Positions 27,868 through 58,556 are shown, counted from the stretch's first letter. The stretch is DNA of 64,000 nucleotides from IMGVR_UViG_3300023202_000247:1-64000, one strand, 5' to 3'. Notes: a model not told the origin generated them from the letters alone. A program made the numbers and translations.

Positions 27868-28236
27868 ATGGAAAAGCTTCGAGTAGAGATTAAAGATTGT
27901 GGTACCAAGAGATACTACAAGTGGGATACGGATGAACTGCATAATCCGTATGGTCCAGCTGTTGAATATGCAGATGGAGATAAAGTTTGGTATCTAAACG
28001 GTAAACGTCATCGTGAAGATGGTCCAGCTGTTGAAGATGCAGATGGAGATAAATCTTGGTGGATAAACGGTAAACGTCACCGAGAAGATGGTCCAGCAAT
28101 TGAATATGCAGATGGAGATAAAGAATGGTGGGTAAACGGTGTCGAATTGACAGAAAAAGAGTTTCACAATCGTCACTCTTGTACCAGCAAGATTGTAGAG
28201 ATTGATGGAAAACGTTACAAACTAGAAGAGGTTTGA
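27868..28236 (+). CDS. HREDGPA repeat protein, 3 units
   Basis: Paralog of 27358. Confidence 0.92.
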   Translation: MEKLRVEIKDCGTKRYYKWDTDELHNPYGPAVEYADGDKVWYLNGKRHREDGPAVEDADGDKSWWINGKRHREDGPAIEYADGDKEWWVNGVELTEKEFHNRHSCTSKIVEIDGKRYKLEEV

Positions 28237-28239
28237 AAA

Positions 28240-28677
28240 ATGGAAAAACTTCGAGTAGAGATTGACCATCATGGTAACAATAGATACTACAAGTGGGATA
28301 CGGATGAACTGCATAATCCATATGGTCCAGCTGTTGAATATGCAGATGGAGATAAAGTTTGGTATCTAAACGGTAAACGTCATCGTGAAGCTGGTCCAGC
28401 TGTTGAATGGGAAGATGGAGATAAAGAGTGGTGGATAAATGGTAAACGTCACCGAGAAAATGGTCCAGCAATTGAACATGTAGATGGATCTAAATTTTGG
28501 TATATAAACAATAAACTTCATCGTGAAGATGGTCCAGCAATTGAATATGCAGATGGAGATAAAGAATGGTGGGTAAACGGTGTCGAATTGACAGAAAAAG
28601 AGTTTCACAATCGTCACTCTTATGCTGGCAAAGTTGTAGAGATTGACGGAAAACGTTACAAACTAGAAGAGGTTTGA
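28240..28677 (+). CDS. HREDGPA repeat protein, 4 units
   Basis: Paralog of 27358. Confidence 0.92.
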   Translation: MEKLRVEIDHHGNNRYYKWDTDELHNPYGPAVEYADGDKVWYLNGKRHREAGPAVEWEDGDKEWWINGKRHRENGPAIEHVDGSKFWYINNKLHREDGPAIEYADGDKEWWVNGVELTEKEFHNRHSYAGKVVEIDGKRYKLEEV

Positions 28678-28680
28678 AAT

Positions 28681-28980
28681 ATGGAAAAGCTTCGAGTAGA
28701 GATTAATGATTGTGGTGACAAGAGGTATTACAAGTGGGATACGGATGAGTATCATAATCCATATGGTCCTGCTATTGAACGTGCAAATGGAACTAAATGT
28801 TGGTATGTAAACGATAAGCGTCATCGTGAAGATGGCCCTGCTATTGAATTTGCAAATGGACATAAAGAGTGGTATCTAAACGGTGTCGAATTGACAGAAA
28901 AAGAGTTCAACAATCGTCACTATTGCGCTGGTAAAGTTGTAGAGATTGACGGAAAACGCTATAAACTAGAAGAGGTTTGA
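28681..28980 (+). CDS. HREDGPA repeat protein, 2 units
   Basis: Paralog of 27358. Confidence 0.92.
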   Translation: MEKLRVEINDCGDKRYYKWDTDEYHNPYGPAIERANGTKCWYVNDKRHREDGPAIEFANGHKEWYLNGVELTEKEFNNRHYCAGKVVEIDGKRYKLEEV

Positions 28981-30626
28981 GAACAAGAGATGATGCTAAT
29001 CAGGTTGTAATATGAAAAAAGAAGCTGACGATTACGATCATATCATTTTCGTCAATCTGCCCGGTAATGGGGGAACGATTCGAAGGTTTTTCTGGACCGG
29101 AAAAGATTGGTCGGAAAAGTTTGAAGATGCAATGGCATATCCGAAATACAGCGGGGGCTTGCGAGCCCTCTTCGATATTCCCGAGGAAAAAATCCAGGAA
29201 ATTTGCGTTTCAAAAGATGATGGGCAAATCGTAGCTAGTGCACTTACTACACCTAGACATCATATGAAGCTTTCCCACTTTGGGCTTTGGGATCCATTCA
29301 AGGATAAGCCCAGTGAATTCGAGGAAGATAACAGAAACACGTACAAATTCAAGGAAGAGTAAGTGAAAGCAGCAGAAGACGATTACAACTGTAAACACAC
29401 GAATAAGAACCGTCCCTTCAATTCCGTGTTTGACACATTGGGTGAAGGGTATATCGTCCTACGTGATTGTCTCGATTGTCACTCGACTTTGACCGAGCCG
29501 ATGCCAACGGATGTGCGTGACTGTTTAGAGTTATTGCGAGAAGCATGTAGACTATACAAAAAGCCTTACCATCTTTACTGGTGGGAAGCTACGCTCATGG
29601 TGCGGGCAACTGGTGACGTGACGTATTCAGACGCCATTGCTCAAACAATCATGAAGATGCGAAAGGAATCAAATGCGTAAAAAATGCGAGCCTAATTGTG
29701 ATCTTGATAACCTGGAGGATAGGGAGATGAGTGATATCGAATATGTGAGCTGGTATCGTGAGGGAGAGCATGGCTGCATCGTTGCTGTGCTGACGGGCAT
29801 GCCGGAGCAGAATGTCCGTGTGGGCATCGGGGACACGTGCCTCGAGGCATATGAGGCGCTCCAGGGCACCGCGATCCAGTGCACGGGTCGTGACTGCGGT
29901 GAGGCAGCCGCGCTCGAGTGGGCAGTCGGTGCGGGCTGGTGCGAGTCGGGACTTGATGAGTACGAGCCGGACCCGGACGAATTGACCGTGGGCGACGACG
30001 ACGACGATGATGACACGATTGCCGCGACCATCCACGAGCACGGCAACGGCCTGGTAGACGTGGGAGACCACGTCGCCGGCAACGACGGCGAGCTGTACGA
30101 GGTGGTCGAGACTGGCGGGATCCATTGTAGCCCGAGCGGCAGCGGCGGTGGCAACTACATGCATGGCCGTGTACGGCTCGCCGATTGGGATGATTTGACG
30201 GAAGAAGAGGCGGAATACGTGACGTGCTCAGCCGAGGTGCAGTCATGAGCGCCGTCAAGGAATTCGAAGTCAAGGTCTATGACTGTGACCCGAACGATAA
30301 CGGCGGCGGCGAGTGGCCCGAGAGCTATTCAGTACGCTGCGCCCCGGAGGATGCGGAACACATGGCGGCCCTCGAGCTGGAGTATCTCGCGCAAGACCTC
30401 GGCGGCGTGTCCGACTACGCGCCGGGCCAGACTATCTACGCACTCGTTTTCGTGCCCGGGGACGTGCGCCAGGTATCACATGTGCTGACTGCTGAGGATC
30501 TCGGGATCAACAGTTGAGAAATTGAAGGTTCTTTTGCAATGATTGAGCTGTTTGGTGCGCAAACGAAAAAGCAGTTTCGCGAGTATTATTACAGCTGACA
30601 CTCGAGACGGAGATGAAAGATGAACG

Positions 30627-32318: not shown

Positions 32319-32451
32319 TTATTTAACCCGAAAAAAGAGTAAGCAATGAATCATAAGTTTAGAATGGTTTCGGTCTTTTGCGCACATGCCATCGGGTCCG
32401 TGTATGACCACATTCGCGAGTACACTCAAAAGCTGGTTCAATCGAGACCTG

Positions 32452-32487
32452 GTAACAAAGAATGCTGTGCTCCTAAAAGTCACAGAC
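32452..32487 (+). CRISPR. Solitary CRISPR repeat, type B (GTAACAAAGAATGCTGTGCTCCTAAAAGTCACAGAC)
   Basis: 36 bp; aligns without gaps to the array repeat at 44040; stem CTGTG/CACAG. Confidence 0.85.
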
Positions 32488-33550
32488 CTGCCATGGATTC
32501 AATTGGCATGCCTCCCGTAAACGTGTACATGCTTCGTCGTCGTAAGAATTACGAGCTACCGAACTGAAGATAAAATAAGAGATTACATTTGCATATGTGG
32601 CAATTGTGACCACGAGTGGAAACAATCTGGAAATATTGACACTTTAAAGGTTTCATGCTCCGAGTGTTTTGATGACGATGATATCGCTTGGCACGAACTG
32701 GAAGATGAAGAGTTTGACAAGACAGTAAACCATTTAGCAGAAGAAATCGAAGGGATTTATGCGCCAGGCGAGCTTTATAACTACGTACAAGACGCTCTAA
32801 TGGAGGAAGCTGCTAAAAAAGCAAAAAGCATTAGATACCAGCAGGATAAACAGCTCGAAGCTCTTGTAAGAGTAAAAGGAAGTGAGTGGGTTAGAAAAAA
32901 TCTAATTCATCCATGGCGCTAACGTTATCGGGCCATATGGCCCGATAAATGGCCCGATACAATTTTGGAATGAGGAAATGGACGATGGCGGGCACAACTT
33001 GGAAAGCAGCATGAGCAGTCACATCTGTTGTCCAGCACAAACCGTAGAGAAAGCTTGTCTCAAAGCTCGCGATGTTTTGGAGCAAAAGCATGAGCAAATT
33101 CTAAAAGAAGGTAAAAACAGGGTAACCAAAGCGGAGGCATCATTGCTACGCTTTTTACGGTAAAGTTCTCGAAAGCGTTCAAAGCCGAAGTGGTGGCGTC
33201 CTTGGATTCCCGCACGATTCAAGCGAGAACCTGACAAACTATCTCTTCGTGAGATGTTGAGACCCAATTGACAGTTGGATCTTTGATTCGTGTGTAAGTG
33301 ACTACATTTTGTATGAACGATATGTATTGCTTGGACGTGCAAAAGAAACCATGCTGCCCGTTTCCTACTCTTATTACGATGACGTGGAAGAGCTGGAACG
33401 CTTGATTAACTTGTGCAACGTTAGCACTGGTGAAATTTTTCTCACCGGTGAAGATTTGAAACTTATCGGCGATTTCCTAGAATCAAGTCCATATCGATGA
33501 TAACAATAGAAAGAAAGGAGGAGGTTATGTATTAACCTCAACAAAGGAGC

Positions 33551-34253: not shown

Positions 34254-34358
34254 TCTGAGTAGCTTGCAGGTTTTCATTTGATTACATTACCTGATAGTGT
34301 TTTTAACATGGGTAGTTATCATAAAAGGTAATTATGGTGGCAGCCCGCGCTCATAATT

Positions 34359-34392
34359 TTACAAGGATGCTGTGCTCCTAAAAGTCAAGAGC
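34359..34392 (+). CRISPR. Solitary type B repeat with a degenerate 3' end
   Basis: TTACAAGGATGCTGTGCTCCTAAAAGTCAAGAGC, 32 nt upstream of ORF 34425. Confidence 0.75.
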
Positions 34393-34424
34393 TGAACAAG
34401 AACGTATGGATGAAAGAGTAAACA

Positions 34425-34799
34425 ATGCATAAATTTCTCAAGGATATGGAGCAAAGTGGCGACCTACTCCTCTTTAAGCAAAAACAGATGCATCTAAATG
34501 AAGGTCCGACATTCTTTGGCAAGTCATTAACTGAGCGATGCTGTGGTACCAATTCATTTTTGACGGTGCGCTACTCATTCTTCACGTTAGAAATTCGTCA
34601 AGCTTATGACGTAGAAAACGTAAAGAAGAGTTTTACGCCTGTTAGGTGGGAATTGCGTTTCGAAGGTGGTCATGAAATCGACTGGGGTATGGCAGAGACC
34701 GTTGTAGATGCCATCGAAGATGCAGAGTCTGCGTTGCGAAAACGAGTAAAAGAATTCGTAGATATCGTTACGCTTTCTAAGAACGTTTCTAATGATTGA
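34425..34799 (+). CDS. Hypothetical protein, 124 aa
   Basis: ORF track; preceded by a type B repeat. Confidence 0.75.
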   Translation: MHKFLKDMEQSGDLLLFKQKQMHLNEGPTFFGKSLTERCCGTNSFLTVRYSFFTLEIRQAYDVENVKKSFTPVRWELRFEGGHEIDWGMAETVVDAIEDAESALRKRVKEFVDIVTLSKNVSND

Positions 34800-34893
34800 T
34801 AATTTACAACATGTCCAAGAATACGAGGGAATCCACAATGATCTAATGATTGATAATTTACAACATGTCCAAGAATACGAGGGAATCCACAAT
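34788..34893. repeat. 54-bp tandem duplication (could encode MIDNLQHVQEYEGIHN twice)
   Basis: Direct inspection. Confidence 0.9.
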
Positions 34894-34956
34894 AAATAAA
34901 CCACTGGAATAACTGGTCTGGTAGCATTCCGGCCAAACTAAACGATAGGAAAAGAA

Positions 34957-35265
34957 ATGAATAGGCTCAAAGAAGACTCCTACAAAGATGCAGCTGCTCT
35001 CATTCGTATGTACAAAAAGTACGATGATGAACGGTTCTTGACCCAAGCAGCTTTTGTGCTGAGTACCACAAACGAATACGGTGTTGAGTTGTCTACGGTG
35101 ATTGCCATGTCGGAGCTGGATGCTGTCAAGGTTAATCATCAAAACCTGATGAAGTTGCACGAGTTCAAGGCTGATGGCCAAAAGGATCCTGTGCCGCTCA
35201 AATGGTGGGTATCAAACTTGTGTGAACTTGACAATCTGTTAAATCATCGAAACTATAATGCCTGA
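34957..35265 (+). CDS. Hypothetical protein, 102 aa
   Basis: ORF track. Confidence 0.7.
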   Translation: MNRLKEDSYKDAAALIRMYKKYDDERFLTQAAFVLSTTNEYGVELSTVIAMSELDAVKVNHQNLMKLHEFKADGQKDPVPLKWWVSNLCELDNLLNHRNYNA

Positions 35266-36517
35266 AAGATTTTTCAATATATTCGAGTACGAATCTTCCA
35301 GTTTAGATGATAACTGTATCATTTATCATGACGTAACGTTTATAAATGACGTTACACAGATCAAAGCTGGAACGAAATTTAGTCAGTGTGCTTTTCAAGT
35401 TGCATCTGGCAGACTAGTAGTTAGTGACGGTCGCACGGTAAATCTCGAGTACTATCAAGAGTTTCTTCGAGAACGCAACCGCTGTGATAAGTGCGGCGGT
35501 CCGGTTGAGCTTCAAAGCAATCTGAAACAATCTTTTTGTATTGACTCTCTATCTAACAATCCTGGTAAAGCATATAATCGTGAATGGATGAGCATTCCAC
35601 ACTGGTGGGAGTATGAGTGGTGTCACAAATGTGAAAGTATATCGGAGAGTGACAAAAAAGAAGTTATGGTTAAGCTCAGGCAAAATTTGAAGCGCTGCAA
35701 GATCGCAGAGAATATCTTGGGCATCTGTGAACGTGGCCATTATCATACACATGGTGGACAACATGTAAAACTAGAAATCAATAAGTCTCCAGATGTAGTT
35801 GCTCATAAAGGTTTCGATTACAAGCCGTTGCTCCATACCCCTCAGTTGAGTGTAAACAACGAAACAACGCAAAACGCCATCTTTCGTTTACATGAAAAAT
35901 ACCCAGAGGCAAGTATCGTTGCGCTGAACTTTGCATCAGCTAAGCGTCCGGGTGGTGGCTTCCTCGAAGGTTCCATGGCGCAAGAGGAAGACTTGTGTTA
36001 TAGTTCAACACTATACGCATCTCTTCGCAATGCTAGTTCGTTTTACGAGATGAATGCTGAAAGCAGGCTGATTTGTGGTCATCCATATAATGCTGGACTT
36101 TACGAAAACGTACTAGCCATTAGTCGCAACGTTGCCTTTATCAAAAATAATGCATATGGAGTTTTTACCAGGCCAACATACGTAGATGTGGTTACATGTG
36201 CCGCACCGAACGCAAACGAATTCTTCAGACTCTATGAGCGTGCTGATAAAGATGGCCAATCAATTTTAGAAGAGGTGTTGGACAAGCGTATTCGTTTCAT
36301 GCTACATGAAATTGGTCCACGGTATGACATTCTCATCTTGGGAGCATGGGGCTGTGGTGTGTTTGGAAATGACCCGCACTTTGTTGCGCGACTGTTCAAA
36401 CAGAACTTGCAAATGGATTTCTGCGAGAAGGTGAAGCTTGCACACTTTCCCGTGTATGACAGGGAACCTGGCTCTAAGACATTCAACACATTTAAAAAGG
36501 TTCTACAGTATGTTTGA
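35258..36517 (+). CDS. TIGR02452-family macrodomain (bacterial PARG-like ADP-ribose glycohydrolase) with an extra N-terminal region
   Basis: LNFASAKRPGGGF...AQEEDLC and ILGAWGCGVFGNDP. Confidence 0.9.
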   Translation: MPERFFNIFEYESSSLDDNCIIYHDVTFINDVTQIKAGTKFSQCAFQVASGRLVVSDGRTVNLEYYQEFLRERNRCDKCGGPVELQSNLKQSFCIDSLSNNPGKAYNREWMSIPHWWEYEWCHKCESISESDKKEVMVKLRQNLKRCKIAENILGICERGHYHTHGGQHVKLEINKSPDVVAHKGFDYKPLLHTPQLSVNNETTQNAIFRLHEKYPEASIVALNFASAKRPGGGFLEGSMAQEEDLCYSSTLYASLRNASSFYEMNAESRLICGHPYNAGLYENVLAISRNVAFIKNNAYGVFTRPTYVDVVTCAAPNANEFFRLYERADKDGQSILEEVLDKRIRFMLHEIGPRYDILILGAWGCGVFGNDPHFVARLFKQNLQMDFCEKVKLAHFPVYDREPGSKTFNTFKKVLQYV

Positions 36518-38476
36518 TAAGCTTGCTCCATTTGGAGCTGCGCAGGTCCATACGGACCAGTATCTGCGCTGGTGTCGACGTGAATTGTCGATGAGTCATA
36601 AAGAATACGAAAGCTGTGGAGAGATCAACGCAACCGGGCTTGCAGAGGCATGTGCTCAGGAGCTTGAAGCATATGTAGATTTTGAAGAATTCAAAATCTA
36701 GCCGGAAGTGTTTGATGCTGCCGCAGAAGCTGCGCTCGAATGGGAGCGAGCTGTAATCAAAGGAGATAATTAAATGCTACATTTCAATCTACCAACTACT
36801 CGCGAGCGTGCTGACTGGGGCTGTTATGGCCGTGGAGTTAGCGAGCAATACCGTCTCGTTGCCATCGAAGATGATGATACGATTCGTGCATGGGATTATG
36901 TTGGTGAAACTTACAGCGTGCATCACGATCTGAGTGATGCAGAGTGCGAAGAGATCAGGCGTATGGCTGTGCTTGTACGTAATGGCAAGTACTATACGGC
37001 TGGCGGCTTCCTCATAAGGAAAGATGAACAAGCGGCGTAAAGCAACCATCATCAAGGTTCTCGAGTCGGCATCTGTACGTATTCAGACGGCTCCGAAAAC
37101 AGCTGCGTGGATGCTTACACATCCCGAGTCTTTGCATGATGAAGCAAAGGTTCGGGATGTGGCCATACAGTATAGTGAGCCATGGATTGGACAACCATTT
37201 ATCGTGGTAGATGTTGAGTATGAGTAAAAAATCTGAAGAAAACGATATGCTCAATGTGAGCGAGAACACTGAACTGATTGGAAGGTAATTAGGTGAGGTT
37301 CAAATGGGAAATAAATTCGCGACTTATTCTTTGGTAGCGGTTCATTCCCGTGAAGCTGGCCAAGTCAGCGGCATGTGGGTGCAGGACCATGTTGGAACTC
37401 TGGACACTGCTAAGAAAGCTGCTGCCCGAACTGAAACTGTGAACGGGAACGTAAAGATCGCAGTGGTTTTCGGAGTCAACAAGACTGGCCCGATGCCGAG
37501 TTATCACGAATGTTTGGTGGAGCTGTGATGGTCATCATATCTTTTCTCACAGGCTATTGTCTATTTTCCTATGTTGCAGCCGGCTTGATTGCAAACAAGC
37601 GTGTCGGAGGCCAAGAAGCCAAAGTTATGTTTGGAGATGTAATGGTTGGTATTCTGTGGCCGTTGTGGATTTCGTTAGCCTGCTTTAAGGCTTTGTATCT
37701 TTTCGCATGTTGGTTGCCCAATGCATTTGTAAGACTTTACAAATGGTCTGTTGTATCTGGTAGTACTGTAAAGACATCGTTGCTTGCAGCAATTTCAATG
37801 TCACTCGGACTTGAGTCTGAGAAAAAGGATGATGTACGAGAGCATGGTGCTTATCGTACATGCGCAAGGGTCGAACTTCTAGAAGTGGACAATGATTATG
37901 ACTACATCGATCGTCCGCTTCTGATTCCAACAGAGGTGAATTGGGATTGGGACTACTCATACGGTGACTGCGAAGATGATGAAGATGGATTTTACGATGA
38001 AAAGTTTCAAAACATGCTGGATGAAAGCCCCGCCATCAAGATGGCAAAGTTTCGAGACGTGATGAATGATGATGGCTAAGCCGATACGATTCGTTGTAAT
38101 CCTACCATCGTTGCTTTTTACATTGAGTGCGTTTATCCTGCTTTGGGTGGCCACTCGAGGTTCGGTGTTTGAGGCGATTGTTTTTCTCATAGCATCGCTC
38201 TTCCATTTCTTTGCAGCTTACAAGTTCTACCTTTACATGGATATGAAAGATGCTCCGTTACCAAAGCGCAAGGAGCATCCGGGTCCATTGGTTGCGTTGG
38301 TATATCCCAATGCATTTCCAAATGTTGACCGGGAAAAACTTCAAGAACATATCAAAGAGTGTTTGCCATGCAGACTCTTTGTTGAAAGCGAATGTGAGAA
38401 CAATCCTCATCGCGATGCGACTCGCGATGAATTGCGTGAAATCTGGGAACGAAGAATAAATAAAGAAACGGAGTAA
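36510..38476 (+). other. Small hypothetical genes, including two membrane proteins (37528-38079, 38066-38476)
   Basis: ORF track; hydrophobic segments. Confidence 0.6.
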
Positions 38477-38573
38477 AAAGTGACTAAAAGGATTTCTTGC
38501 AGTGTTCAAAAAGCTTTCGCATAGTGACCAGCAAAAGGTTTTGAACTCCATTTGAAACAAAAGAGTCGTATAG

Positions 38574-39359
38574 ATGGAAAAGTTACGAGTAGAGATTAAT
38601 TGTCGTGGTAACAAGATGTATTACAAGTGGGATACGGATGAACTGCATAATCCGTATGGTCCAGCTGTTGAATACGCAAATGGAACTAAATATTGGTATC
38701 TAAACGGTAAACATCACAGAGATGATGGCCCAGCTGTTGAATATGCAAATGGAGCTAAAGAGTGGTGGATAAACGATAAGCGTCATCGTGAGGATGGTCC
38801 AGCTGTTGAAGGTGCAAATGGACATAAAGAGTGGTATCTAAACAATAAACTTCATCGTGAAGATGGTCCAGCTGTTGAAGGTGCAAATGGACATAAAGAT
38901 TGGTATCTAAATAGTAAACGTCACCGAGAAGATGGTCCAGCTGTTGAATATGCAAATGGATATAAATCTTGGTGGATAAATGGTAAACGTCACCGAGAAG
39001 ATGGTCCAGCTATTGAATATGCAGATGGATATAAAGATTGGTATGTAAACGGCAAGCTTCATCGTGAAAATGGTCCAGCTGTTGAATTTGCAAATGGACA
39101 TAAAGAATGGTATCTAAACGGTAAACTTCATCGTAAAGATGGTCCAGCAATTGAAAATGCAAATGGACGTAAAGAGTGGTGGGTAAACGGAAAGCTTCAT
39201 CGTGAGGATGGTCCAGCTGTTGAATATGCAAATGGAGATAAATGTTGGTATGTAAATGGTACCAAACTGACAGAAGAAGAGTTCAACAGTCGTCACTCAT
39301 CTTGTACCAGCAAGATTGTTAAGATTGACGGAAAACGCTACAAGTTAGAAGAGATTTGA
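38574..39359 (+). CDS. HREDGPA repeat protein, 9 units
   Basis: Same caps and 23-aa period as array 1. Confidence 0.92.
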   Translation: MEKLRVEINCRGNKMYYKWDTDELHNPYGPAVEYANGTKYWYLNGKHHRDDGPAVEYANGAKEWWINDKRHREDGPAVEGANGHKEWYLNNKLHREDGPAVEGANGHKDWYLNSKRHREDGPAVEYANGYKSWWINGKRHREDGPAIEYADGYKDWYVNGKLHRENGPAVEFANGHKEWYLNGKLHRKDGPAIENANGRKEWWVNGKLHREDGPAVEYANGDKCWYVNGTKLTEEEFNSRHSSCTSKIVKIDGKRYKLEEI

Positions 39360-39802
39360 AAATGGAAAAGATAAGATTAGAGATTAATTGTCGTGGTGAC
39401 AAGAAGTATTACAAGTGGGATACGGATGAGTATCATAATCCATATGGTCCAGCTGTTGAATACGAAAATGGAGATAAATATTGGTATTTAAACGATAAGT
39501 GTCACCGAGAAGATGGTCCAGCTGTTGAACATGCAGATGGGCGTAAAGCTTGGTATCTAAACGGAAATCGTCACCGAGAAGATGGTCCAGCTGTTGAATA
39601 TACAAGTGGGGATAAAGAGTGGTGGGTAAATGGGGTACTTCACCGAGAAGATGGTCCGGCAATTGAAGGTGCAGATGGACGTAAATCTTGGTATGTAAAC
39701 GGTACCAAACTGACAAAAGAAGAATTCAACAGTCGTCACTCATCTTGTACCAGCAAGATTGTGGAGATTGACGGAAAACGTTACAAGCTAGAAGAAGTTT
39801 GA
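39356..39802 (+). CDS. HREDGPA repeat protein, 4 units
   Basis: Paralog. Confidence 0.92.
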   Translation: MKMEKIRLEINCRGDKKYYKWDTDEYHNPYGPAVEYENGDKYWYLNDKCHREDGPAVEHADGRKAWYLNGNRHREDGPAVEYTSGDKEWWVNGVLHREDGPAIEGADGRKSWYVNGTKLTKEEFNSRHSSCTSKIVEIDGKRYKLEEV

Positions 39803-40314
39803 GCATGGAAAAGCTAAGATTAGAGATTGACTGTGATGGTACAAAAAAGTATTACAAGTGGGATATGGATGAACTGCATAATCCATATGGTCCAGCTGTT
39901 GAATACGAAAATGGAGATAAATATTGGTATCTAAACGATAAGCTTCACCGAGAAGATGGTCCAGCTGTTGAACATGCAGATGGAAATAAATCTTGGTATC
40001 TAAACGGTAAACTTCATCGTGAGGGTGGTCCAGCTGTTGAAAATGCAAATGGAGATAAAGAGTGGTGGGTAAACGTAAAGCTTCATCGTGAGGATGGTCC
40101 AGCAGTTGAACATGTAGATGGATCTAAATTTTGGTATGTAAACAACAAGCTTCACCGAGATGATGGTCCAGCTGTTGAATATGCAAATGGAACTAAATGT
40201 TGGTATGTAAACGGTACCAAACTGACAAAAGAAGAATTCAACAGTCGTCACTCATCTTGTACCAGCAAGATTGTGGAGATTGACGGAAAACGTTACAAGC
40301 TAGAAGAGATTTGA
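39799..40314 (+). CDS. HREDGPA repeat protein, 5 units
   Basis: Paralog. Confidence 0.92.
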   Translation: MSMEKLRLEIDCDGTKKYYKWDMDELHNPYGPAVEYENGDKYWYLNDKLHREDGPAVEHADGNKSWYLNGKLHREGGPAVENANGDKEWWVNVKLHREDGPAVEHVDGSKFWYVNNKLHRDDGPAVEYANGTKCWYVNGTKLTKEEFNSRHSSCTSKIVEIDGKRYKLEEI

Positions 40315-40685
40315 AAATGGAAAAGCTAAGATTAGAGATTAATTGTCGTGGTGACAAGAAGTATTACAAGTGGGATACGTGTGAACTGCATAATCCATAT
40401 GGTCCAGCAATTGAATTTGCTGGAGATAAATATTGGTATCTAAACGATAAGTGTCATCGAAAAGATGGTCCAGCAATTGAATTTGTAAATGGAACCAAAT
40501 CTTGGTGGATAAACAATAAACTTCATCGGGAAGATGGTCCAGCAATTGAATGGGCAAATGGATCTAAATATTGGTATGTAAACGGTGTCGAATTGACAGA
40601 GGCAGAGTTCAACAATCGTCACTCATCTTGTGCTGGTAAAGTTGTAGAAATTGACGGAAAACGTTACAAACTAGAAGAGATTTGA
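40311..40685 (+). CDS. HREDGPA repeat protein, 3 units
   Basis: Paralog. Confidence 0.92.
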   Translation: MKMEKLRLEINCRGDKKYYKWDTCELHNPYGPAIEFAGDKYWYLNDKCHRKDGPAIEFVNGTKSWWINNKLHREDGPAIEWANGSKYWYVNGVELTEAEFNNRHSSCAGKVVEIDGKRYKLEEI

Positions 40686-41254
40686 AAATGGAAAAGCTAA
40701 GATTAGAGATTAACCATCATGGTGACAAGAGGTATTACAAGTGGGATACGGATGAACTGCATAATCCGTATGGTCCATCTGTTGAATACAAAAATGGATC
40801 TAAATATTGGTATGTAAACGGCAAGCTTCATCGTGAAAATGGTCCAGCTATTGAATTTGCAAGTGGGCGTAAAGATTGGTATGTAAACGGCAAGCTTCAT
40901 CGTGAAAATAGTCCAGCTATTGAATTTGCAAATGGACATAAAGAATGGTATGTAAACGGTAAACTTCATCGTGAAGATGGTCCAGCACCGGCTGACTCAA
41001 TCACGAGCTGGAACATTCGGGAAGATGATGGTTCGAATCCATCACGGCCGGTCATGCACAAATTGCATAAATTGTTAATATCATTGTGGTTTTTGATGCT
41101 CGTACTCATATGTGTGGGTGACCATGTGTATGAGTATCACGAGTGTAAAAGTATCGAGCAGCGTAGTAAGTTCTCCGTGATAAACGGATGTGAAGTAAAT
41201 GTGGGTGGAACGTGGGTTCCACGGCAAGCGTGGGGTGGTGATAAAAATGAATGA
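40682..41254 (+). CDS. Chimeric ORF: HREDGPA N-terminal part read through into a 66-aa membrane-protein ORF (ATG 41054)
   Basis: Repeat breaks at GPA|PADS (about 40987); MHKLHKLLISLWFL... follows. Confidence 0.7.
   Translation: MKMEKLRLEINHHGDKRYYKWDTDELHNPYGPSVEYKNGSKYWYVNGKLHRENGPAIEFASGRKDWYVNGKLHRENSPAIEFANGHKEWYVNGKLHREDGPAPADSITSWNIREDDGSNPSRPVMHKLHKLLISLWFLMLVLICVGDHVYEYHECKSIEQRSKFSVINGCEVNVGGTWVPRQAWGGDKNE
40986..41054 (+). tRNA. Degenerate tRNA-like element (not a functional tRNA call)
   Basis: GATGG-TTCGAAT-CCATC T-arm, ACCGGC/GCCGGT acceptor-like stem, CTC-AATCAC-GAG D-arm-like; no credible anticodon arm or CCA. Confidence 0.35.
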
Positions 41255-41370
41255 AGAAAAATATGTTGACTATGATGAGGATACCAATTGCTATGGTATC
41301 TTTGCTGTAGAGCGAGACTTTTGTTTCGCATTGTTCACGGACGAAAAAACTGCCAAGCAGTACATGAAGG

Positions 41371-41916
41371 ATGCATACGGACAAGATTGTTGATTATATC
41401 AACAGCCGTTTGATAAGTATTCAAAAGAAGTACAACTTTCCTCCGAACGTCAAGTTGCGTGACGTTCCAGATAATAAAGATGCAATAAAACATTATCATC
41501 AATTCAAAGAATTGGTGAGGTTAATTGAAAAAACGAATCTCGACGTTGATATTCCGTATGACGAGAGTGGTGAGTCGCCCACAGAAAAGTTTGTGAAGCT
41601 CACTCAACGTGATGTATTCGTTTACTTCTGCCAAGAAGGCTTCTCCACAACTTGGAAGATTGGATACTCAACCCAATCATTTCGAAGAATAAAAGCAGTG
41701 CAGACTGGCAATCCGAACGATTTGCACTTGCGCTATGAGGTGCCTGGTTCCTTTGACCTAGAGCAAAGCCTTCATAGGTATCTGAAGAACTTTAGAATCA
41801 AGGGTCGGTCGAAGGAGTGGTTCGACCTTGACCCTGCAATGGTTGAGAACATTGTTAAACGCCTGAAAAATGGCGAAGATTTTTATACACAAAAGGCTTT
41901 GAAAAATGAAACGTAA
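41371..41916 (+). CDS. GIY-YIG (T5orf172/MUG113-like) domain protein
   Basis: VYFCQEG...WKIGYS...IKAVQTGNP...LEQSLHRYL...EWF. Confidence 0.85.
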   Translation: MHTDKIVDYINSRLISIQKKYNFPPNVKLRDVPDNKDAIKHYHQFKELVRLIEKTNLDVDIPYDESGESPTEKFVKLTQRDVFVYFCQEGFSTTWKIGYSTQSFRRIKAVQTGNPNDLHLRYEVPGSFDLEQSLHRYLKNFRIKGRSKEWFDLDPAMVENIVKRLKNGEDFYTQKALKNET

Positions 41917-43921
41917 GACTTCATCGTTGCCTACGCGAATTTACACATATGGCATCGTAAGTATGGATACAGATAGTCATAGCATCATCATGGAGCAGTT
42001 GTTCGAAGGCAACAAAGTTCGTAATCAACTTGTTGCTCTCGAGCGTGAGCGACGCGCAAAGTTTCGCACGCTTCGCTCCGAGGTTGCTCCGCAGCTCGCT
42101 GTTCTCGAGATGGAAAAAGACGGTATCGTATCCCTATACGATGATGCACTTGTCCAGTTGAAGAAGCTCAAGCGTACTGAGCGTGATGGTTCGGCAGAGC
42201 TTGATGTTTTGAATGGTGTGAAAAAGAAACTAGCCATAGTCAAAGAACGTCTGAAGAAGATGCGGCAAGAGGTTGATGACGAGCACTTCAAGCCTGGTAA
42301 AATCGCTTTCAAGAAAGAGTACAAGAAAAGGGTTGAAGATTACAAGGCTCAAGATGAAAACGGTAACTGCGGGCCACATATCCAAGCACGTATCAAAAAA
42401 GAATTGCGTGAAGAGTTTCGTGCCGATTGCAAGTACTCTAGTTGGTTGAAGAGTGACGAGATTCAGGAGTGGTTCGAGTCAGAGTTCAAGCGCATCAAGA
42501 ATGAGAGTCCTTGTTACCCTGGTACCAAGGCTGCTGTATCTGATGCAGCTATGAAGTCATTTAGTGACTCTATGGTTGATCCAGCATTCAAACCTTTTGA
42601 TGGTGGTCGAGTCGAGCGTCAGCTGTTAGAGGCGGTAAAAGGAAAGTATATTGCTGCCATTCCAGAACGAATCATGTCTGGAGAGCTACGTAACATTTGC
42701 ATCACGCCGGTAATGCCAAAACTCAGCAATGGTGGAGAATATCAGGCAAAAATCAGATTGGCCAATGATGTTTACGTAACTGTAAACTTCATCATGCATC
42801 GACCATTGCCTCAAGACTCGTCCGCAAAGTTTGTTCGCGTTCTCGCAAAACGAGTTGGAAATCATTTCAAGTTCGAGTTACAATTTGTAATCGAGTTTGA
42901 TTTGCCCGATCGTCAAACTACTGATAGCTTGATTGCTCTCGACATTGGTTGGCGAGTGCTAGATGATGGTAGTTTCTTGGTTGCTACGTCATGGGATGGT
43001 AAAGAAACGAAACAGTTGAAGTTGCCATCCGAACTTGCAAGTATCAACGCACGATGTGTAGAGCTTCTTGGTTATGCTGATAAGCATCTTGATAATATCA
43101 AGGTGTTTGCTGGTGAACACAAGGAAGACATTGCCAAGGTAATTGGTGATCGTATGGATCTTTCACACATTCACAAGTGGCGCTCGTCAAAAAAGATGCG
43201 CAAACTAACAAACATCTTTGTGCAAGATGTACTTGATGAGCGTGTCCATGAACTATGGAGGTCTTGGAAAAAGCATCGTGGGTTCAACAAAACTAAGGGT
43301 CAAACTTGGTCTCAGTGGAGGGCTTTGCGAAAGACACCACCAAAGGATCTGTATGATAAGCCAGACATCATCTTTGCGTGGGCATCTAGCCTTGATTTGA
43401 GTAATGATGAGTGCATTGCTGTGTGTTTGGAATGGTGGCGTCGTAAGGATATTCACCTGACTGACTATGCACGGAATACTCAGCATCGTTTGTTCTTGCG
43501 TCGTCGCGAAATCTTCCGAGTTTTTGCAAGTCAGATTGCTAAAAAGTATGATACTTTGGTAATTGCAAAGCTCAATCGCTCCAAGCTAGCAGAAAAGCCC
43601 AAGGCGGATAAGGACCGACGTACCAAGCATGACGAGAACACAAATAGTGTGCGTCAGTTTGTTGGGCCTTCCATTCTAGTACAAGCATGTAAGGAAGCGT
43701 TCCGAGGCTCCGTTGTGGAGCTTTCTGGCGTGAAGAATCTTCATCACAACTGTGGAGGCAAGCCTAAGACTGAACACAAGATTCAAAATGTCTTGTGTGG
43801 TAAGTGTGAAAAAATGTTTAACCATGATTTGAATTACGCAAAGGTATTGTATCATCGCGGTAGCGAGCGGTCCGGTGGTGCCGCAGGTACCGGCAGCGCT
43901 CGTAAAAGTGCAAGTGCGTGA
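41906..43921 (+). CDS. cas12m: Type V CRISPR effector, Cas12m (V-M, formerly V-U1)-like, probably DNase-inactive
   Basis: RIYTYG N-terminus, MHRPLP, RuvC-I LDIGWR, RuvC-II position LVIAKLN without an acidic residue, CGKC zinc ribbon, RuvC-III HDLNYA; immediately followed by leader and repeats. Confidence 0.8.
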   Translation: MKRKTSSLPTRIYTYGIVSMDTDSHSIIMEQLFEGNKVRNQLVALERERRAKFRTLRSEVAPQLAVLEMEKDGIVSLYDDALVQLKKLKRTERDGSAELDVLNGVKKKLAIVKERLKKMRQEVDDEHFKPGKIAFKKEYKKRVEDYKAQDENGNCGPHIQARIKKELREEFRADCKYSSWLKSDEIQEWFESEFKRIKNESPCYPGTKAAVSDAAMKSFSDSMVDPAFKPFDGGRVERQLLEAVKGKYIAAIPERIMSGELRNICITPVMPKLSNGGEYQAKIRLANDVYVTVNFIMHRPLPQDSSAKFVRVLAKRVGNHFKFELQFVIEFDLPDRQTTDSLIALDIGWRVLDDGSFLVATSWDGKETKQLKLPSELASINARCVELLGYADKHLDNIKVFAGEHKEDIAKVIGDRMDLSHIHKWRSSKKMRKLTNIFVQDVLDERVHELWRSWKKHRGFNKTKGQTWSQWRALRKTPPKDLYDKPDIIFAWASSLDLSNDECIAVCLEWWRRKDIHLTDYARNTQHRLFLRRREIFRVFASQIAKKYDTLVIAKLNRSKLAEKPKADKDRRTKHDENTNSVRQFVGPSILVQACKEAFRGSVVELSGVKNLHHNCGGKPKTEHKIQNVLCGKCEKMFNHDLNYAKVLYHRGSERSGGAAGTGSARKSASA

Positions 43922-44039
43922 TTTCATTGCTAAAGATGTAGAATGAGAAAATAATTTTGCAAGTTGTTATAATAATAATTTGCAACCTCTTGCAAAACAA
44001 CCCGTAACCATTTGAAATCATTGATGATTTCAAATGGGG
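43899..44039 (+). promoter_or_regulatory. CRISPR leader copy 1 with an extended -10 promoter (TGTTATAAT, 43965-43973) and a 14-bp palindrome
   Basis: CCATTTGAAATCAT-TG-ATGATTTCAAATGG directly before repeat 1; duplicated at 44526-44686. Confidence 0.8.
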
Positions 44040-44183
44040 GTAACAAAGGATGCTACGCTCCTTAAAGTTGTAGACGATTGGTTGGGAGTGGAGTCGCTAC
44101 GTCGAGCCAGGTAACAAAGGATGCTACGCTCCTTAAAGTCACAGACAAACTCAAAGAATGCTGTGCTCCTAAAAGTCACAGAC
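44040..44183 (+). CRISPR. Mini-array 1: type A repeat, 35-nt spacer, A/B hybrid repeat (44111-44146), type B repeat (44148-44183)
   Basis: Direct inspection. Confidence 0.9.
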
Positions 44184-44213
44184 AAAAGAATAACGAAACG
44201 GAAAGAGTAAAGA

Positions 44214-44519
44214 ATGAAGAAGAGTAACGAAACGAATTTTTCATCAGCATATTTCCACATTTACAATGGTGGAATGTCAATTTCTATCGTCAAAATATCT
44301 GAAGGTGATACCTTAGAATTTAGATTGAGAATTGCAAACTCAATTTTCGGAGCAGCGTTTAGTCATGAATTTCCGTTGCCTCCACCAAAGGGGTTGCGTT
44401 GGATTGCAAAATCCTTTGAAAGTTTGGCTGATTATATAGAGAAAGAATCAGCCAATGGTCATAACAGTATTTCTCCATTTGAGACCATCCAGATAAATGG
44501 TAGCGAATCTAAGCTTTAA
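44214..44519 (+). CDS. Hypothetical protein, 101 aa, embedded in the CRISPR locus
   Basis: ATG 30 nt after a type B repeat; stop just before leader copy 2. Confidence 0.7.
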   Translation: MKKSNETNFSSAYFHIYNGGMSISIVKISEGDTLEFRLRIANSIFGAAFSHEFPLPPPKGLRWIAKSFESLADYIEKESANGHNSISPFETIQINGSESKL

Positions 44520-44525
44520 AGGACT

Positions 44526-44686
44526 CTCGCAAAAGTGCAAGTGCGTGATTTCATTGCAATCGGAGACAGCATGCCCCTAAAGATGTAGACTGAAAAAATA
44601 ATTTTGCAAGTTGTTATAATAATAATCTGCAACCACTCGCAAAACAACCCGTAACCATTTGAAATCATTGATGATTTCAAATGGGG
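44526..44686 (+). promoter_or_regulatory. CRISPR leader copy 2
   Basis: Near-identical to leader 1 with a 20-nt insertion; TGTTATAAT at 44612-44620. Confidence 0.8.
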
Positions 44687-45377
44687 GTAACAAAGGATGC
44701 TACGCTCCTTAAAGTTGTAGACGACGATAGCCGCTGCAGTGTGCACTGAATACGCAAGTAACAAAGGATGCTACGCTCCTTAAAGTTGTAGACAAATCGC
44801 CCGGCCAGACAGGGAGCTGGCGAAGTTGGTCGAGCCGGTGTAACAAAGGATGCTACCCTCCTTAAAGTTGTAGACTATTCTTACAATGTGCATCTGAGCA
44901 TTATTTACAAGTAACAAAGGATGCTACGCTCCTTAAAGTTGTAGATTAGGACTGATTGTGGTGAAGCAGAAAGAAGGTAACAAAGGATGCTACGCTCCTT
45001 AAAGTTGTAGACTAGACAGCTCGCCGAGCGATCCGAAGTTGGTCGAGCCGGTGTAACAAAGGATGCTACCCTCCTTAAAGTTGTAGACTATTCTTACAAT
45101 GTGCATCTGAGCATTATTTACAAGTAACAAAGGATGCTACGCTCCTTAAAGTTGTAGATTAGGACTGATTGTGGTGAAGCAGAAAGAAGGTAACAAAGGA
45201 TGCTACGCTCCTTAAAGTTGTAGACTAGACCGCGGCACCGCGTGTGACGCTCCTCATGTAATAAAGGATGCTACGCTCCTTAAAGTTGTAGACAGGGGAC
45301 GAGCCGTGAGCGGCTCGTAATAAAGGATGTAGACAGCCACAGCCATAGCCAATGGATGCCACGCTCCTTAAAGTTGT
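44687..45377 (+). CRISPR. Main array, repeat GTAACAAAGGATGCTACGCTCCTTAAAGTTGTAGAC
   Basis: Full repeats at 44687, 44758, 44840, 44911, 44977, 45053, 45124, 45190, 45258; degenerate repeats at 45317 and about 45354; spacers 23-46 nt. Confidence 0.97.
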
Positions 45378-45566
45378 TGTAAAAATGTACCTGGGGTGCG
45401 CCTATATAAAGTAACAGTAATAAAATGTCACCAAAACCATGGACCATTGAAGGTATAATAATTTCTGCAAGGAATGATTTGGCTTTAGGTAAGACACCAA
45501 GTGGTGGGCCACTTACAATCATAGCCGCAAGCATACTTGCCAAACAATATAGTCCACGAAAGCAAG

Positions 45567-57792: not shown

Positions 57793-57882
57793 GTCACAGA
57801 CAAGTATCGTAGTTAGATGGAGCCTCAGTGGTAACGCAGAACGTGAGACGAGGCTGTCACTGCATTTGATCTACGAAGAATT

Positions 57883-57992
57883 TTTACAAAGGATGCTGTG
57901 CTCCTAAAAGTCACAGACGGCTTGACGCCGCCAGAATTCGTGATTAGCATGATGTTTCATCACAAAGGATGCTGTGCTCCTAAGTCACAGAC
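57883..57992 (+). CRISPR. Mini-array of two type B repeats (57883-57918, about 57958-57992) around a spacer of about 40 nt
   Basis: Direct inspection; the second repeat has a 2-nt deletion in the loop; a further 3'-end remnant GTCACAGAC lies at 57793-57801. Confidence 0.85.
57922..57950 (+). promoter_or_regulatory. sigma70-type promoter occupying the mini-array spacer
   Basis: TTGACG, exactly 17 bp, TAGCAT; predicted start site about 57957, at the 5' end of the second repeat. Confidence 0.65.
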
Positions 57993-58049: not shown

Positions 58050-58556
58050 ATGAGTAACCAAACCAAGCAAGCCTACACTTCGCATGACGCCGCCAAGATC
58101 CTGGGTGTGAGCAATAGCTCCGTGCTCAAGTGGATTGACGACGAAAAGCTCGCAGCCTACCGTACCCCTGGTGGTCACCGGCGCATCAAGCCCGAGGATC
58201 TTCGTGCGTTCGCTGCCGAGTATGAGATGCCGTTTGCTGCCGGCGACGCTGGCGAGGGCAAGGTATTCTTCCTGGGCAAGCGTCTGCCCAAGAGCCTGAA
58301 GGATTACGACACCCAGAAGTTCTCGCCGAGTGACATGGTCAAAACGATCGTGGCCATCGCTTCCGAGAAGCCTGCGGTTGTCGTGCAGGCCGAGGGTGAC
58401 AATGCCGAGAGCGTACTCGAGGCAATTCAGGAGAGCAGTGCGGGTTCCCGCTACGTTCTCGTGGCCGAGGAGAACGAGGAGAACGCGGCCCTGCTCAAGA
58501 GCGTGAAGAAGCTCGGCGGCGAGGTTGTGGCCTCTCTGAAGGATCTCGAGCTGTAA
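58050..58556 (+). CDS. Excisionase-type HTH (HTH_17/MerR-like) regulator with a degenerate receiver-like C-terminus
   Basis: YTSHDAAKILGVSNSSVLKWID...AYRTPGGHRRI. Confidence 0.85.
   Translation: MSNQTKQAYTSHDAAKILGVSNSSVLKWIDDEKLAAYRTPGGHRRIKPEDLRAFAAEYEMPFAAGDAGEGKVFFLGKRLPKSLKDYDTQKFSPSDMVKTIVAIASEKPAVVVQAEGDNAESVLEAIQESSAGSRYVLVAEENEENAALLKSVKKLGGEVVASLKDLEL

What the first reader, a model, noticed from the sequence alone, without database searches (positions are those of the whole stretch)
34359..44216. Type B repeat plus a shared ribosome-binding tail forms a common 5' leader on two unrelated genes
Seen: B at 34359-34392 and B at 44148-44183 each end 30-32 nt before an ATG (34425 and 44214), and both leaders finish with GAAAGAGTAAA(C/G)AATG. 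The downstream proteins show no similarity. The 20-25 nt after the repeat, which would be the guide, reach or overlap the RBS region. Inference: Cas12m loading or cleavage could sequester or expose the RBS (translational control), or repeat+RBS works as a recombination cassette head for gene capture.
Basis: partly seen in the sequence, partly recalled or inferred. Interest (0 to 1): 0.68.

Follow-up and report, generated by a model that had tools for sequence, protein, structure and literature searches.

The report
Stray CRISPR repeats heading phage genes
A giant phage that carries its own DNA-binding Cas12m also has at least a dozen stray copies of a variant CRISPR repeat just upstream of small genes; the two leaders flagged here are two of them, joined by recombination at the repeat, and whether Cas12m controls these genes through the repeats is untested.

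Summary
A variant ("B") of the phage's type V-M CRISPR repeat ends 32 and 30 nt before the ATGs at 34425 and 44214. Both leaders end in the same 11-mer, found nowhere else in the window, and the two proteins are unrelated.

- **Family:** at least 12 co-oriented B copies (single, doubled, one mini-array) lie between 32 and 117 kb of a 321-kb jumbo phage that encodes a Cas12m lacking the RuvC-II glutamate.
- **RNA handle:** B keeps the crRNA stem through compensatory changes relative to the array repeat A. The 34357 copy has lost that stem, and the 44148 copy has a weakened pseudoknot.
- **Shared tail:** it is a near-consensus ribosome-binding region for this genome, and its exact identity is strain-specific.
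- **Mosaic leaders:** a hybrid A/B repeat, a duplicated CRISPR leader and a relative whose ORF101 homologue has no B show that B cores are recombination hubs. One event placed ORF101 inside the CRISPR locus.
- **Other phages:** other Cas12m phages show repeats abutting genes, distant single repeats and a gene inside an array.

Best guess: these are Cas12m handles in 5' UTRs that allow processing and damping of translation. Decoy RNAs and neutral recombination scars remain live rivals. I rate it a new variant of viral solitary repeat units.

The parts
41906..43921 (+). cas12m (671 aa), type V-M effector; RuvC-I D346 and RuvC-III D641 are present, RuvC-II Glu is replaced by Ala554
   Evidence: PDB 23vw Cas12m E 1.2e-24; PADLOC Cas12u1 E 1.8e-47; catalytic columns
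43930..44039 (+). CRISPR leader, copy 1
   Evidence: 43930-44077 is 97% identical to 44577-44724 (family D13); sequence
44040..44110 (+). Type A repeat (44040-44075) plus a 35-nt spacer: the mini-array
44111..44146 (+). A/B hybrid repeat (A 5' half, B 3' tail); stem S2 is reduced to 2 bp; read as a recombination junction
44148..44183 (+). Type B repeat heading ORF101; S2 is intact and S1 is weakened by G>A at 44157 in this strain
44184..44213 (+). 5' UTR of ORF101, with SD-like GAAAGAG at 44201-44207; 44186-44202 is a diverged copy of codons 3-8 of the ORF
44214..44519 (+). ORF101, a real protein-coding gene of unknown function embedded in the CRISPR locus
   Evidence: dN/dS 0.11 and dS 0.82 against P0019; no Pfam, PHROG, NCBIfam or PADLOC hit
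44530..44686 (+). Second copy of the last ~30 nt of cas12m (including the stop codon) plus CRISPR leader, copy 2
44687..45386 (+). Main type A CRISPR array (about 10 repeats; spacer content differs between strains)
34357..34392 (+). Degenerate type B repeat heading ORF124 (core 34363-34387 intact; 1-nt deletion; S2 stem lost)
   Evidence: the 5' flank is homologous to the L002/57883 subfamily
34393..34424 (+). 5' UTR of ORF124, with SD-like GAAAGAG at 34412-34418
34425..34799 (+). ORF124, an orphan protein (only identical copies found)
32452..32487 (+). Type B repeat with an A-like 5' end, lying inside or after the doubtful ORF 32346-32567
57793..57992 (+). B mini-array: repeat-tail fragment 57793-57801, B 57883-57918, 40-nt spacer, then B with a 2-nt deletion at 57959-57992
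58050..58556 (+). ORF168, an excisionase/MerR-type HTH protein, starting 57 nt after the last B

Best explanation
What it is (well supported). The two leaders belong to a family of at least 12 co-oriented copies of a variant ('B') type V-M CRISPR repeat. The copies are scattered over about 85 kb of a 321-kb jumbo phage that carries its own Cas12m, which lacks the RuvC-II glutamate, and a separate array of type A repeats. B keeps the stem that characterises Cas12m crRNA handles through compensatory base changes, so it is an RNA handle rather than a random DNA repeat. B cores serve as homologous-recombination hubs, and that history produced the observed features:
- a hybrid A/B repeat;
- a duplicated CRISPR leader;
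- capture of ORF101 into the CRISPR locus;
- mosaic 5' leaders.
The RBS tail shared by ORF124 and ORF101 is a near-consensus initiation region that the two leaders share through this mosaicism. It is not a guide.

How it works (inferred).
1. B-led genes are transcribed with a Cas12m handle in their 5' UTR. ORF101 is necessarily transcribed from the CRISPR leader promoter.
2. Cas12m, which processes its own pre-crRNA upstream of the handle, would cut the transcript there.
3. It would then stay bound to the handle plus the next ~20 nt, which reach the Shine-Dalgarno or start region (ATG at +12 to +35 in four of five B-led genes in this phage, +58 in the fifth).
4. Cas12m occupancy would therefore define the mRNA 5' end and damp translation of a set of small accessory genes.
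The 34357 copy has lost the handle stem and has probably escaped this control.
For: Effector: Cas12m is identified with a D-A-D RuvC triad. Published Cas12m proteins bind DNA without cutting, use a single 50-60 nt crRNA with a stem plus pseudoknot handle, and self-process within the repeat (PMC10442227, PMC11013384).

Handle fold:
- A and B differ by compensatory changes in the stem that ends 2 nt before the repeat end (CTACG:TGTAG versus CTGTG:CACAG).
- The same anchored stem, with unrelated sequences, occurs in 13 of the 14 other phage V-M repeats checked.
- It is broken in the hybrid 44111 and in 34357.

Distribution: there are 12 B copies, all on the + strand (0.5^11 if orientation were random).

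Placement: in five large intergenic regions (164-415 nt) the last B lies 11-57 nt from the next ATG (Fisher p = 0.017).

Conservation: a relative diverged by dS 0.82 keeps 19 nt of B and its 5' flank unchanged at a contig end.

Recombination:
- hybrid repeat, duplicated leader and duplicated cas12m 3' end;
- mosaic ORF124 leader;
- no B before ORF101 in the relative.

Other Cas12m phages:
- terminal repeats lie 22-38 nt from the next start (L016, L017, L018, L028, L042);
- a variant single repeat 4 kb from the array lies 22 nt before a gene and covers its RBS (L016);
- a 65-aa ORF sits inside an array (L020).

Strain variation: all 3 SNPs in 2.8 kb between two strains fall in the 66-nt B plus leader.
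Against: - There are no RNA or protein data, and no natural precedent for a crRNA-mRNA fusion used in cis.
- The two flagged copies are the least intact handles: S2 is lost at 34357 and S1 is weakened at 44148.
- ORF101 exists without B in a relative, so B is dispensable for the gene.
- Repeat-to-start distances vary from 11 to 57 nt, so the geometry is not fixed.
- Spacer-less doublets are not obviously needed for cis control.
- It is unknown whether this Cas12m accepts B as well as A.
- Closeness to start codons is partly forced by compact phage genomes.
- Free-RNA folding shows no link between repeat and RBS (z-scores about 0).
Confidence: 0.4

Rival explanations
1. RNA anti-CRISPR (Racr-like) decoys. 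The B units would be transcribed as guide-less repeat mimics that load and neutralise a rival type V-M effector, either from the host or from a competing related phage, whose array uses B-type repeats. The small ORFs behind them would be co-transcribed anti-defence genes, as in the published acrIC5-racrIC1 bicistron.
For: - Solitary repeat units are common in viruses, often sit just downstream of promoters, cluster with acr genes and can share a transcript with one (PMC10651486).
- B differs from the phage's own array repeat A.
- Spacer-less doublets (44111/44148 and two in L004) and a B followed by a terminator (L006) need no guide.
- There are many copies.
- B-type units are also present in a relative whose own array repeat is a third type.
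- The downstream ORFs are small orphans.
Against: - No array with B-type repeats exists in 185,579 species-representative genomes or in the metagenome collection. The host is unknown, so this is weak evidence.
- The nucleotides conserved between A, B and the relative's repeat suggest the phage's own Cas12m would be titrated too.
- The phage carries its own effector, unlike defined solitary repeat units.
- The 57.9-kb unit has a normal 40-nt spacer.
Confidence: 0.25
2. Neutral scars. B units would be leftovers of an older or fragmented array, spread and homogenised by repeat-repeat recombination and gene conversion. They would lie next to start codons only because intergenic space is short, and the shared tail would simply be the genome's preferred ribosome-binding region. 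Nothing acts through them today.
For: - Clear recombination footprints: hybrid repeat, duplicated leader, duplicated array block 44821-45020 = 45034-45233, and a remnant of ORF65 after the last repeat in L020.
- The tail is near-consensus, and B-less genes match it 14/16.
- The 34357 and 57959 copies are decaying.
- ORF101 works without B in a relative.
Against: - Nine of the 12 copies keep a perfect 27-nt core across 85 kb.
- B is unchanged in a relative at dS 0.82 (0.5^19 under neutrality).
- The stem is maintained by compensatory change.
- All copies are co-oriented with transcription.
- B is placed non-randomly at the 3' end of long intergenic regions (p = 0.017).
- The same layout recurs in unrelated Cas12m phages.
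Confidence: 0.2
3. Hard-wired regulatory crRNAs. Each B plus the ~20 nt after it would be a fixed guide that sends the binding-only Cas12m to a DNA target (a host gene, a competitor phage or the phage's own promoters) for CRISPRi-like silencing. The B variant would mark these guides as a separate class, as atypical repeats do in CRISPR-associated transposons.
For: - Cas12m silences by binding, and the RuvC-II Glu is missing here.
- L006 has B + 31 nt + terminator, and 57883 has a 40-nt spacer.
- crRNA-like regulators are known (10.1101/2024.12.27.630466).
Against: - No target with <=3-4 mismatches was found in the 85 kb of this genome that I could read. The only near matches are at chance level: 17/20 at 55535, and 15/18 in the 80-nt terminal repeat.
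- There are no exact 20-mers elsewhere in IMG/VR.
- Doublets have no guide.
- For gene-leading copies the 'guide' is simply the UTR.
Confidence: 0.1
4. A dedicated gene-capture system in which the B repeat plus RBS is an evolved cassette head, analogous to integron attC/attI, that recruits and expresses new genes.
For: Two unrelated genes share the head; ORF101 was moved into the CRISPR locus; ORF153 in L004 is flanked by B doublets on both sides.
Against: - No site-specific recombinase is associated with the B units.
- The junctions look like ordinary homologous recombination within the core.
- The heads differ in 5' flank, spacing and RBS among members.
- Only two of about nine heads share the tail.
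Confidence: 0.05

Closest known systems
Viral solitary repeat units (SRUs) and RNA anti-CRISPRs (Racr), Camara-Wilpert et al. 2023 (PMC10651486)
   Same: Single CRISPR-repeat copies in intergenic regions of a virus, in the sense orientation, sometimes on one transcript with a small gene. Type V examples exist.
   Different: Here the virus encodes its own effector and array of the same subtype. The stray repeats are a distinct stem variant of that array's repeat. Several are spacer-less doublets or lie next to arrays. No host array with this repeat is known, and inhibition is untested.
Type V-M CRISPR-Cas12m (MmCas12m2, GoCas12m; PMC10442227, PMC11013384)
   Same: Effector family, a 36-nt repeat with stem plus pseudoknot ending ...GAC, a single self-processed crRNA, and an incomplete RuvC triad.
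   Different: Phage-borne and only 22-30% identical to other members. A gene lies inside the CRISPR locus, and dispersed repeat copies lie in 5' UTRs.
crRNA-like regulatory RNAs (CreA/CreR, crlRNA, tracr-L); 10.1101/2024.12.27.630466 and own knowledge
   Same: A lone repeat-like unit with a fixed downstream sequence that uses the resident effector for regulation rather than immunity.
   Different: Those act in trans on a promoter through partial complementarity next to a PAM. No such target was found here, and many copies sit directly on the RBS of the next gene.
Atypical-repeat guides of CRISPR-associated transposons (own knowledge: Petassi 2020; Saito 2021)
   Same: Two repeat classes within one system, with the variant class attached to fixed, non-immune guides.
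   Different: No transposon is involved, and the variant class here is dispersed and mostly lacks recognisable guides.
Phage T4 RegB/RegA shut-off of early mRNAs, and synthetic Csy4/Cas12a crRNA-mRNA transcripts (own knowledge)
   Same: A functional analogy for the proposed mechanism: a phage-encoded RNA-binding or RNA-cutting protein acting at or near Shine-Dalgarno regions of a gene set, with a repeat used as an RNA-processing site on an mRNA.
   Different: There is no homology, and the natural use of a CRISPR effector in this way is not documented.

Membership tests
Type V-M (Cas12m) CRISPR repeat | Occurs with a Cas12m effector gene | tested here: met
   cas12m at 41906-43921. The patterns used found no second Cas12m-like gene in this contig.
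Type V-M (Cas12m) CRISPR repeat | 36-nt unit with a handle stem anchored 2 nt before the 3' end, plus pseudoknot stem S1, kept by covariation | tested here: met
   A has CTACG:TGTAG and B has CTGTG:CACAG. The same anchored stem with other sequences occurs in 13 of the 14 other phage V-M repeats checked. It is lost in 34357 and in hybrid 44111.
Type V-M (Cas12m) CRISPR repeat | Arranged in an array with spacers of about 30-40 nt | tested here: not met
   This holds only for A (44687-45386) and for one B pair (57883/57959, 40-nt spacer). The other B copies are single or are doublets with a 1-nt gap.
Type V-M (Cas12m) CRISPR repeat | Bound and processed by the cognate Cas12m | not testable with these tools
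   Needs biochemistry; the complex predictor takes no RNA.
Solitary repeat unit / Racr | Repeat copy in an intergenic region of a virus, with no other repeat within 100 bp | tested here: inconclusive
   Met for 34357, 32452 and L002. Not met for 44148, the L004 doublets, L006 or 57883/57959.
Solitary repeat unit / Racr | Not associated with cas genes on the element | tested here: not met
   The phage encodes Cas12m and an array.
Solitary repeat unit / Racr | Mimics (>=90% identity) the CRISPR repeat of the host's system | tested here: inconclusive
   No genome or metagenome contig in the collections carries the repeat. The host is unknown.
Solitary repeat unit / Racr | Expressed as a small RNA that inhibits CRISPR interference | not testable with these tools
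   Needs expression and interference assays.
crRNA-like regulatory RNA (CreA/crlRNA type) | The downstream 'guide' matches a promoter or target next to a PAM | tested here: not met
   No match with <=3-4 mismatches beyond chance in the window plus L002/L004/L006, and none in IMG/VR for two guides. About 235 kb of the genome and the host could not be searched.
Integron-like gene cassette | Site-specific recombinase and attC-type structured sites at cassette ends | tested here: not met
   Pfam finds no integrase among the nine ORFs scanned around the two leaders and cas12m, and ORF168 is an HTH protein only. B is a direct repeat, not an attC-like inverted repeat, and the junctions lie inside the repeat core.

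The most novel reading that the evidence does not exclude
Cas12m handles embedded in 5' UTRs would make the CRISPR effector a post-transcriptional regulator of a regulon of phage accessory genes. Natural crRNA-mRNA fusions would be cut free by Cas12m and then held at the ribosome-binding site, so that the effector level times or limits their translation. This design would recur in divergent jumbo-phage V-M systems (L016, L018, L020).
Probability: 0.2. Interest if true: 0.85.

Novelty: new variant of a known kind. Interest (0 to 1): 0.55.

Why it matters
Solitary CRISPR repeats in viruses are currently read as decoys against host immunity. Here they belong to the virus's own Cas12m system, keep the handle fold, sit on the 5' UTRs of genes, and mark places where genes were shuffled, including one gene now inside the CRISPR locus.

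If Cas12m acts on these transcripts, a CRISPR effector would be working as an RNA-level gene regulator. That would also provide a ready-made natural design for coupling guide and mRNA expression. If it does not, the locus is still a clear example of CRISPR repeats driving gene mosaicism in a phage genome.

In either case, in vitro processing assays and reporter assays would settle the question.

Tried and rejected
- **Free-RNA switch:** folding both leaders and four others gave no structure linking repeat and RBS (z from -1.0 to +0.3). Rejected.
- **B as a sigma-70 promoter:** the scans list no promoter within B. The TTTACA...TAAAAG seen by eye lacks the -10 T. Rejected.
- **Self-targets of B-linked guides:** only 17/20 at 55535 and 15/18 in the 80-nt terminal repeat, both at chance level.
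- **Protospacers elsewhere:** exact 20-mers of two B guides occur only in this contig. The array of strain L010 gave only weak leader hits against 50,697 phage records, and the cas12m-array region has no DNA match there.
- **B- or A-type repeats in cellular genomes or the metagenome collection:** none in four scans. That collection evidently lacks the source samples too.
- **Function of the B-led proteins:**
  - No Pfam, PHROG, NCBIfam or PADLOC hit.
  - ORF124 has no homologues.
  - An exhaustive search with ORF101 found only faint matches to repeated stretches in giant proteins.
  - The AlphaFold model of ORF101 has pLDDT 46 and is unusable.
- **Complex prediction, Cas12m + ORF101:** no verdict. 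This is not evidence either way.
- **Rfam and tRNA scans of the window:** nothing found.
- **Gene conversion from the ORF124 leader as the source of the strain SNPs:** only one of the two tail SNPs fits, so it is not supported.
- **Homology of the RBS tail with the relative's upstream region:** only the common AAGAGTA motif is shared. Too weak to claim.

Full report
**Source and setting.** The window is the first 64 kb of IMGVR_UViG_3300023202_000247, a 321,461-bp phage contig, and window coordinates equal contig coordinates. Genes run almost entirely on the + strand. ORF 41906-43921 (671 aa) is a Cas12m:
- PDB 23vw 'CRISPR-associated DNA-binding protein Cas12m', E 1.2e-24;
- PADLOC Cas12u1, E 1.8e-47.

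In an alignment of 12 relatives, RuvC-I D346 and RuvC-III D641 are kept, but the RuvC-II glutamate is Ala554. Characterised Cas12m proteins bind DNA without cutting, use one self-processed crRNA of 50-60 nt, and have a stem plus pseudoknot handle (PMC10442227, PMC11013384).

- The B core lies at 34363-34387 and 44157-44178. The repeat ends 32 nt and 30 nt before the ATGs at 34425 and 44214.
- GAAAGAGTAAA occurs only at these two places in the window.
- The two proteins share no detectable similarity.
- The 13 nt before the two start codons are 12/13 identical. This is the top non-paralogous pair of 6555, and a position-weight model expects about 0.04 such pairs.

**Three qualifications.**
1. 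The tail is a near-consensus initiation region for this genome. AAGAG is the commonest upstream 5-mer. The two tails rank 2nd and 11th of 97, and genes at 32346 and 15417 match 14/16 with no B upstream.
2. Strain L012 has GAATGAG in place of GAAAGAG, so the exact identity is strain-specific.
3. The 34357 copy is degenerate (see the next section).

**B is a real repeat variant that keeps the handle fold.** The array repeat A and variant B differ mainly at two blocks that pair with each other: CTACG:TGTAG in A and CTGTG:CACAG in B.
- A stem anchored 2 nt before the repeat's 3' end, with quite different sequences, is found in 13 of the 14 other phage Cas12m repeats I collected (L016-L043), so the fold is conserved by covariation.
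- The hybrid repeat at 44111-44146 (A 5' half, B 3' half) and the 34357 copy (tail GTCAAGAGC plus a 1-nt deletion) keep only 2 bp of it.
- The 44148 copy has an intact stem but a G>A change at 44157 that weakens the pseudoknot stem S1. Strain L012 and most other copies have G there.

**The family.** Exact-core and profile searches give these B copies, all on the + strand:

| Location | Feature |
|---|---|
| 32452 | single B |
| 34357 | degenerate single B |
| 44148 | B, directly after the hybrid repeat |
| 57883 and 57959 | pair with a 40-nt spacer, preceded by a repeat-tail fragment at 57793 |
| L002 (contig 72.6 kb) | single B, outside the window |
| L004 (108.1 and 108.7 kb) | two spacer-less B-B doublets flanking a 153-aa ORF |
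| L006 (117.0 kb) | B, 12 nt after an A-like repeat, followed by 31 nt and a terminator hairpin |

- Five B units or clusters are followed by a start codon 11-57 nt later. In those 164-415-nt intergenic regions, such closeness has a combined p of 0.017.
- The 5' flanks define subfamilies: AAACTC (doublets, 44148), AATTTTTAC (57883, L002, 34357), and others.

**Recombination history.**
- ORF101 lies between two 97%-identical copies of the CRISPR leader (43930-44077 and 44577-44724). The second copy is preceded by a duplicate of the last ~30 nt of cas12m.
- Upstream of ORF101 the order is leader, A repeat, 35-nt spacer, A/B hybrid, 1 nt, then B. This is what a crossover between an array repeat and the first unit of a B-B doublet would leave.
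- ORF101 is a real gene: against its only homologue (P0019, 83% identity, on L014), dN/dS is 0.11 and dS is 0.82, and homology stops at the gene ends.
- In that relative the gene follows another ORF with no B in front, while a B start (19 nt identical, including the AAACTC flank) lies 260 nt downstream at the contig end.
- The ORF124 leader is a mosaic. Its 5' flank plus core matches L002 (57 nt, 86%). From the core to 3 nt before the ATG it matches the ORF101 leader (61 nt, 80%).

B cores are therefore recombination hubs, and the shared 'head' is best read as a product of that history.

**Signs of constraint or selection.**
- Nine of the 12 copies keep a perfect 27-nt core over 85 kb.
- B is unchanged in a relative whose neighbouring gene shows about 50% synonymous differences.
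- The relative's own array begins with a third stem variant, GATGCCATG..., so array repeats turn over while B persists.
- Between strain L012 and the window there are only 3 SNPs in 2819 nt, and all three lie in the 66 nt of B plus leader. The probability is 1e-5, or 1e-3 if conditioned on the first SNP.

**Other Cas12m phages.** A profile search found 27 further viral loci. Together with loci reached through protein look-ups, they show:
- terminal repeats 22-38 nt from the next start codon (L016, L017, L028, L042), and 28 nt before cas12m itself in L018;
- in L016, a variant single repeat 4 kb from the array, 22 nt before a 126-aa ORF and covering its TAGGAG;
- further distant single repeats in L020, L027 and L033;
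- in L020, a 65-aa ORF inside the array, with a remnant of its 3' end after the last repeat;
- very short 'spacers' of 7-18 nt near array ends.

Part of this is expected from compact genomes, but the distant single copies and the array-embedded genes repeat what is seen here.

**Mechanism.**
- *Shown:* the architecture, the fold conservation, the recombination footprints, and the fact that ORF101 has only the CRISPR leader promoter region and repeats upstream of it.
- *Inferred:* Cas12m cuts such transcripts upstream of the handle and stays on the handle plus about 20 nt, overlapping the SD or start region, and so sets the 5' end and damps translation.

I put this at about 0.4 as a whole: roughly 0.8 for the descriptive part and 0.3 for the cis-regulatory part. 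The rivals are:

| Rival | Probability | Main point |
|---|---|---|
| Racr-like decoys against another V-M effector | 0.25 | Fits doublets, B differing from A, and small orphan ORFs, but no B-type array exists anywhere I could search |
| Neutral recombination scars | 0.2 | |
| Hard-wired CRISPRi guides | 0.1 | No targets found |
| Dedicated capture system | 0.05 | |

**Classification.** The closest known kind is the viral solitary repeat unit/Racr (PMC10651486). Membership fails on 'not associated with cas genes' and is open on 'mimics the host repeat'. It is not an integron-like system, and no CreA/crlRNA-type target was found. I rate it a new variant of a known kind, of moderate interest.

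Noticed in passing
window 57843-57876 versus L002:172-205 (contig ~72.6 kb): Two paralogous modules share the layout repeat-tail fragment GGTCACAGAC + 43 conserved nt + ~34 nt + AATTTTTAC + B. The ~34-nt middle segment is inverted between them: 31/34 identical as reverse complement, 14/34 direct. The breakpoints fall in the palindromic ACGT and AATT.
   Followed up: partly
window 44148-44213 versus L012: All 3 SNPs that separate two strains over 2.8 kb (cas12m identical) fall in the B repeat and ORF101 leader (44157, 44200, 44204). This is either a mutation or conversion hot spot or tuning of expression.
   Followed up: partly
window 44186-44202 versus 44220-44236; L014:1691-1728: The ORF101 leader contains a diverged copy of the gene's own codons 3-8. 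The relative has a different 19-nt tandem duplication (ATGAAGAAGAGTAGTGAGA twice) at the same junction.
   Followed up: partly
window 44687-45386; L010:4168-5224: The main array has an exact internal duplication of three repeat-spacer units (44821-45020 = 45034-45233). Strain L010 carries about nine extra spacers, so array content varies between near-identical strains. No cas1 or cas2 gene is among the annotated genes within 10 kb either side of cas12m.
   Followed up: partly
window 1-780: An 80-nt tandem repeat, about nine copies at 99-100% identity, lies at the very start of the contig. It may be a genome terminus feature or an assembly effect.
   Followed up: no
window ~2000-8000: An island of 57-64% G+C in a ~45% genome, with internal exact duplicates (3169-3454 = 4824-5109; 4083-4275 ~ 5529-5721).
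   Followed up: no
window 27300-29000 and 38570-41250; L004:2209-3093: Families of small paralogous genes built from 69-nt (23-aa, MORN-like) repeats. Strain L009 lacks 1533 nt at 39064.
   Followed up: no
window 41371-41916: A T5orf172/MUG113-domain gene overlaps the start of cas12m. It is conserved in the same position in the relative L013.
   Followed up: no
L018:8841-9963; L020:2887-3260: In another phage the whole array lies upstream of cas12m and ends 28 nt before its ATG. In a second phage a 65-aa ORF sits between two array repeats, with a remnant of its own 3' end after the last repeat.
   Followed up: partly
L013:3092-3121: The relative with an 86%-identical Cas12m starts its array with a third stem variant of the repeat (GATGCCATG...). 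The handle stem therefore changes quickly between close relatives.
   Followed up: partly
window 35258-36517: A microbial-type poly(ADP-ribose) glycohydrolase domain protein (PF10021, E 4e-28) lies 460 nt downstream of ORF124. It is a possible counter-defence gene.
   Followed up: no
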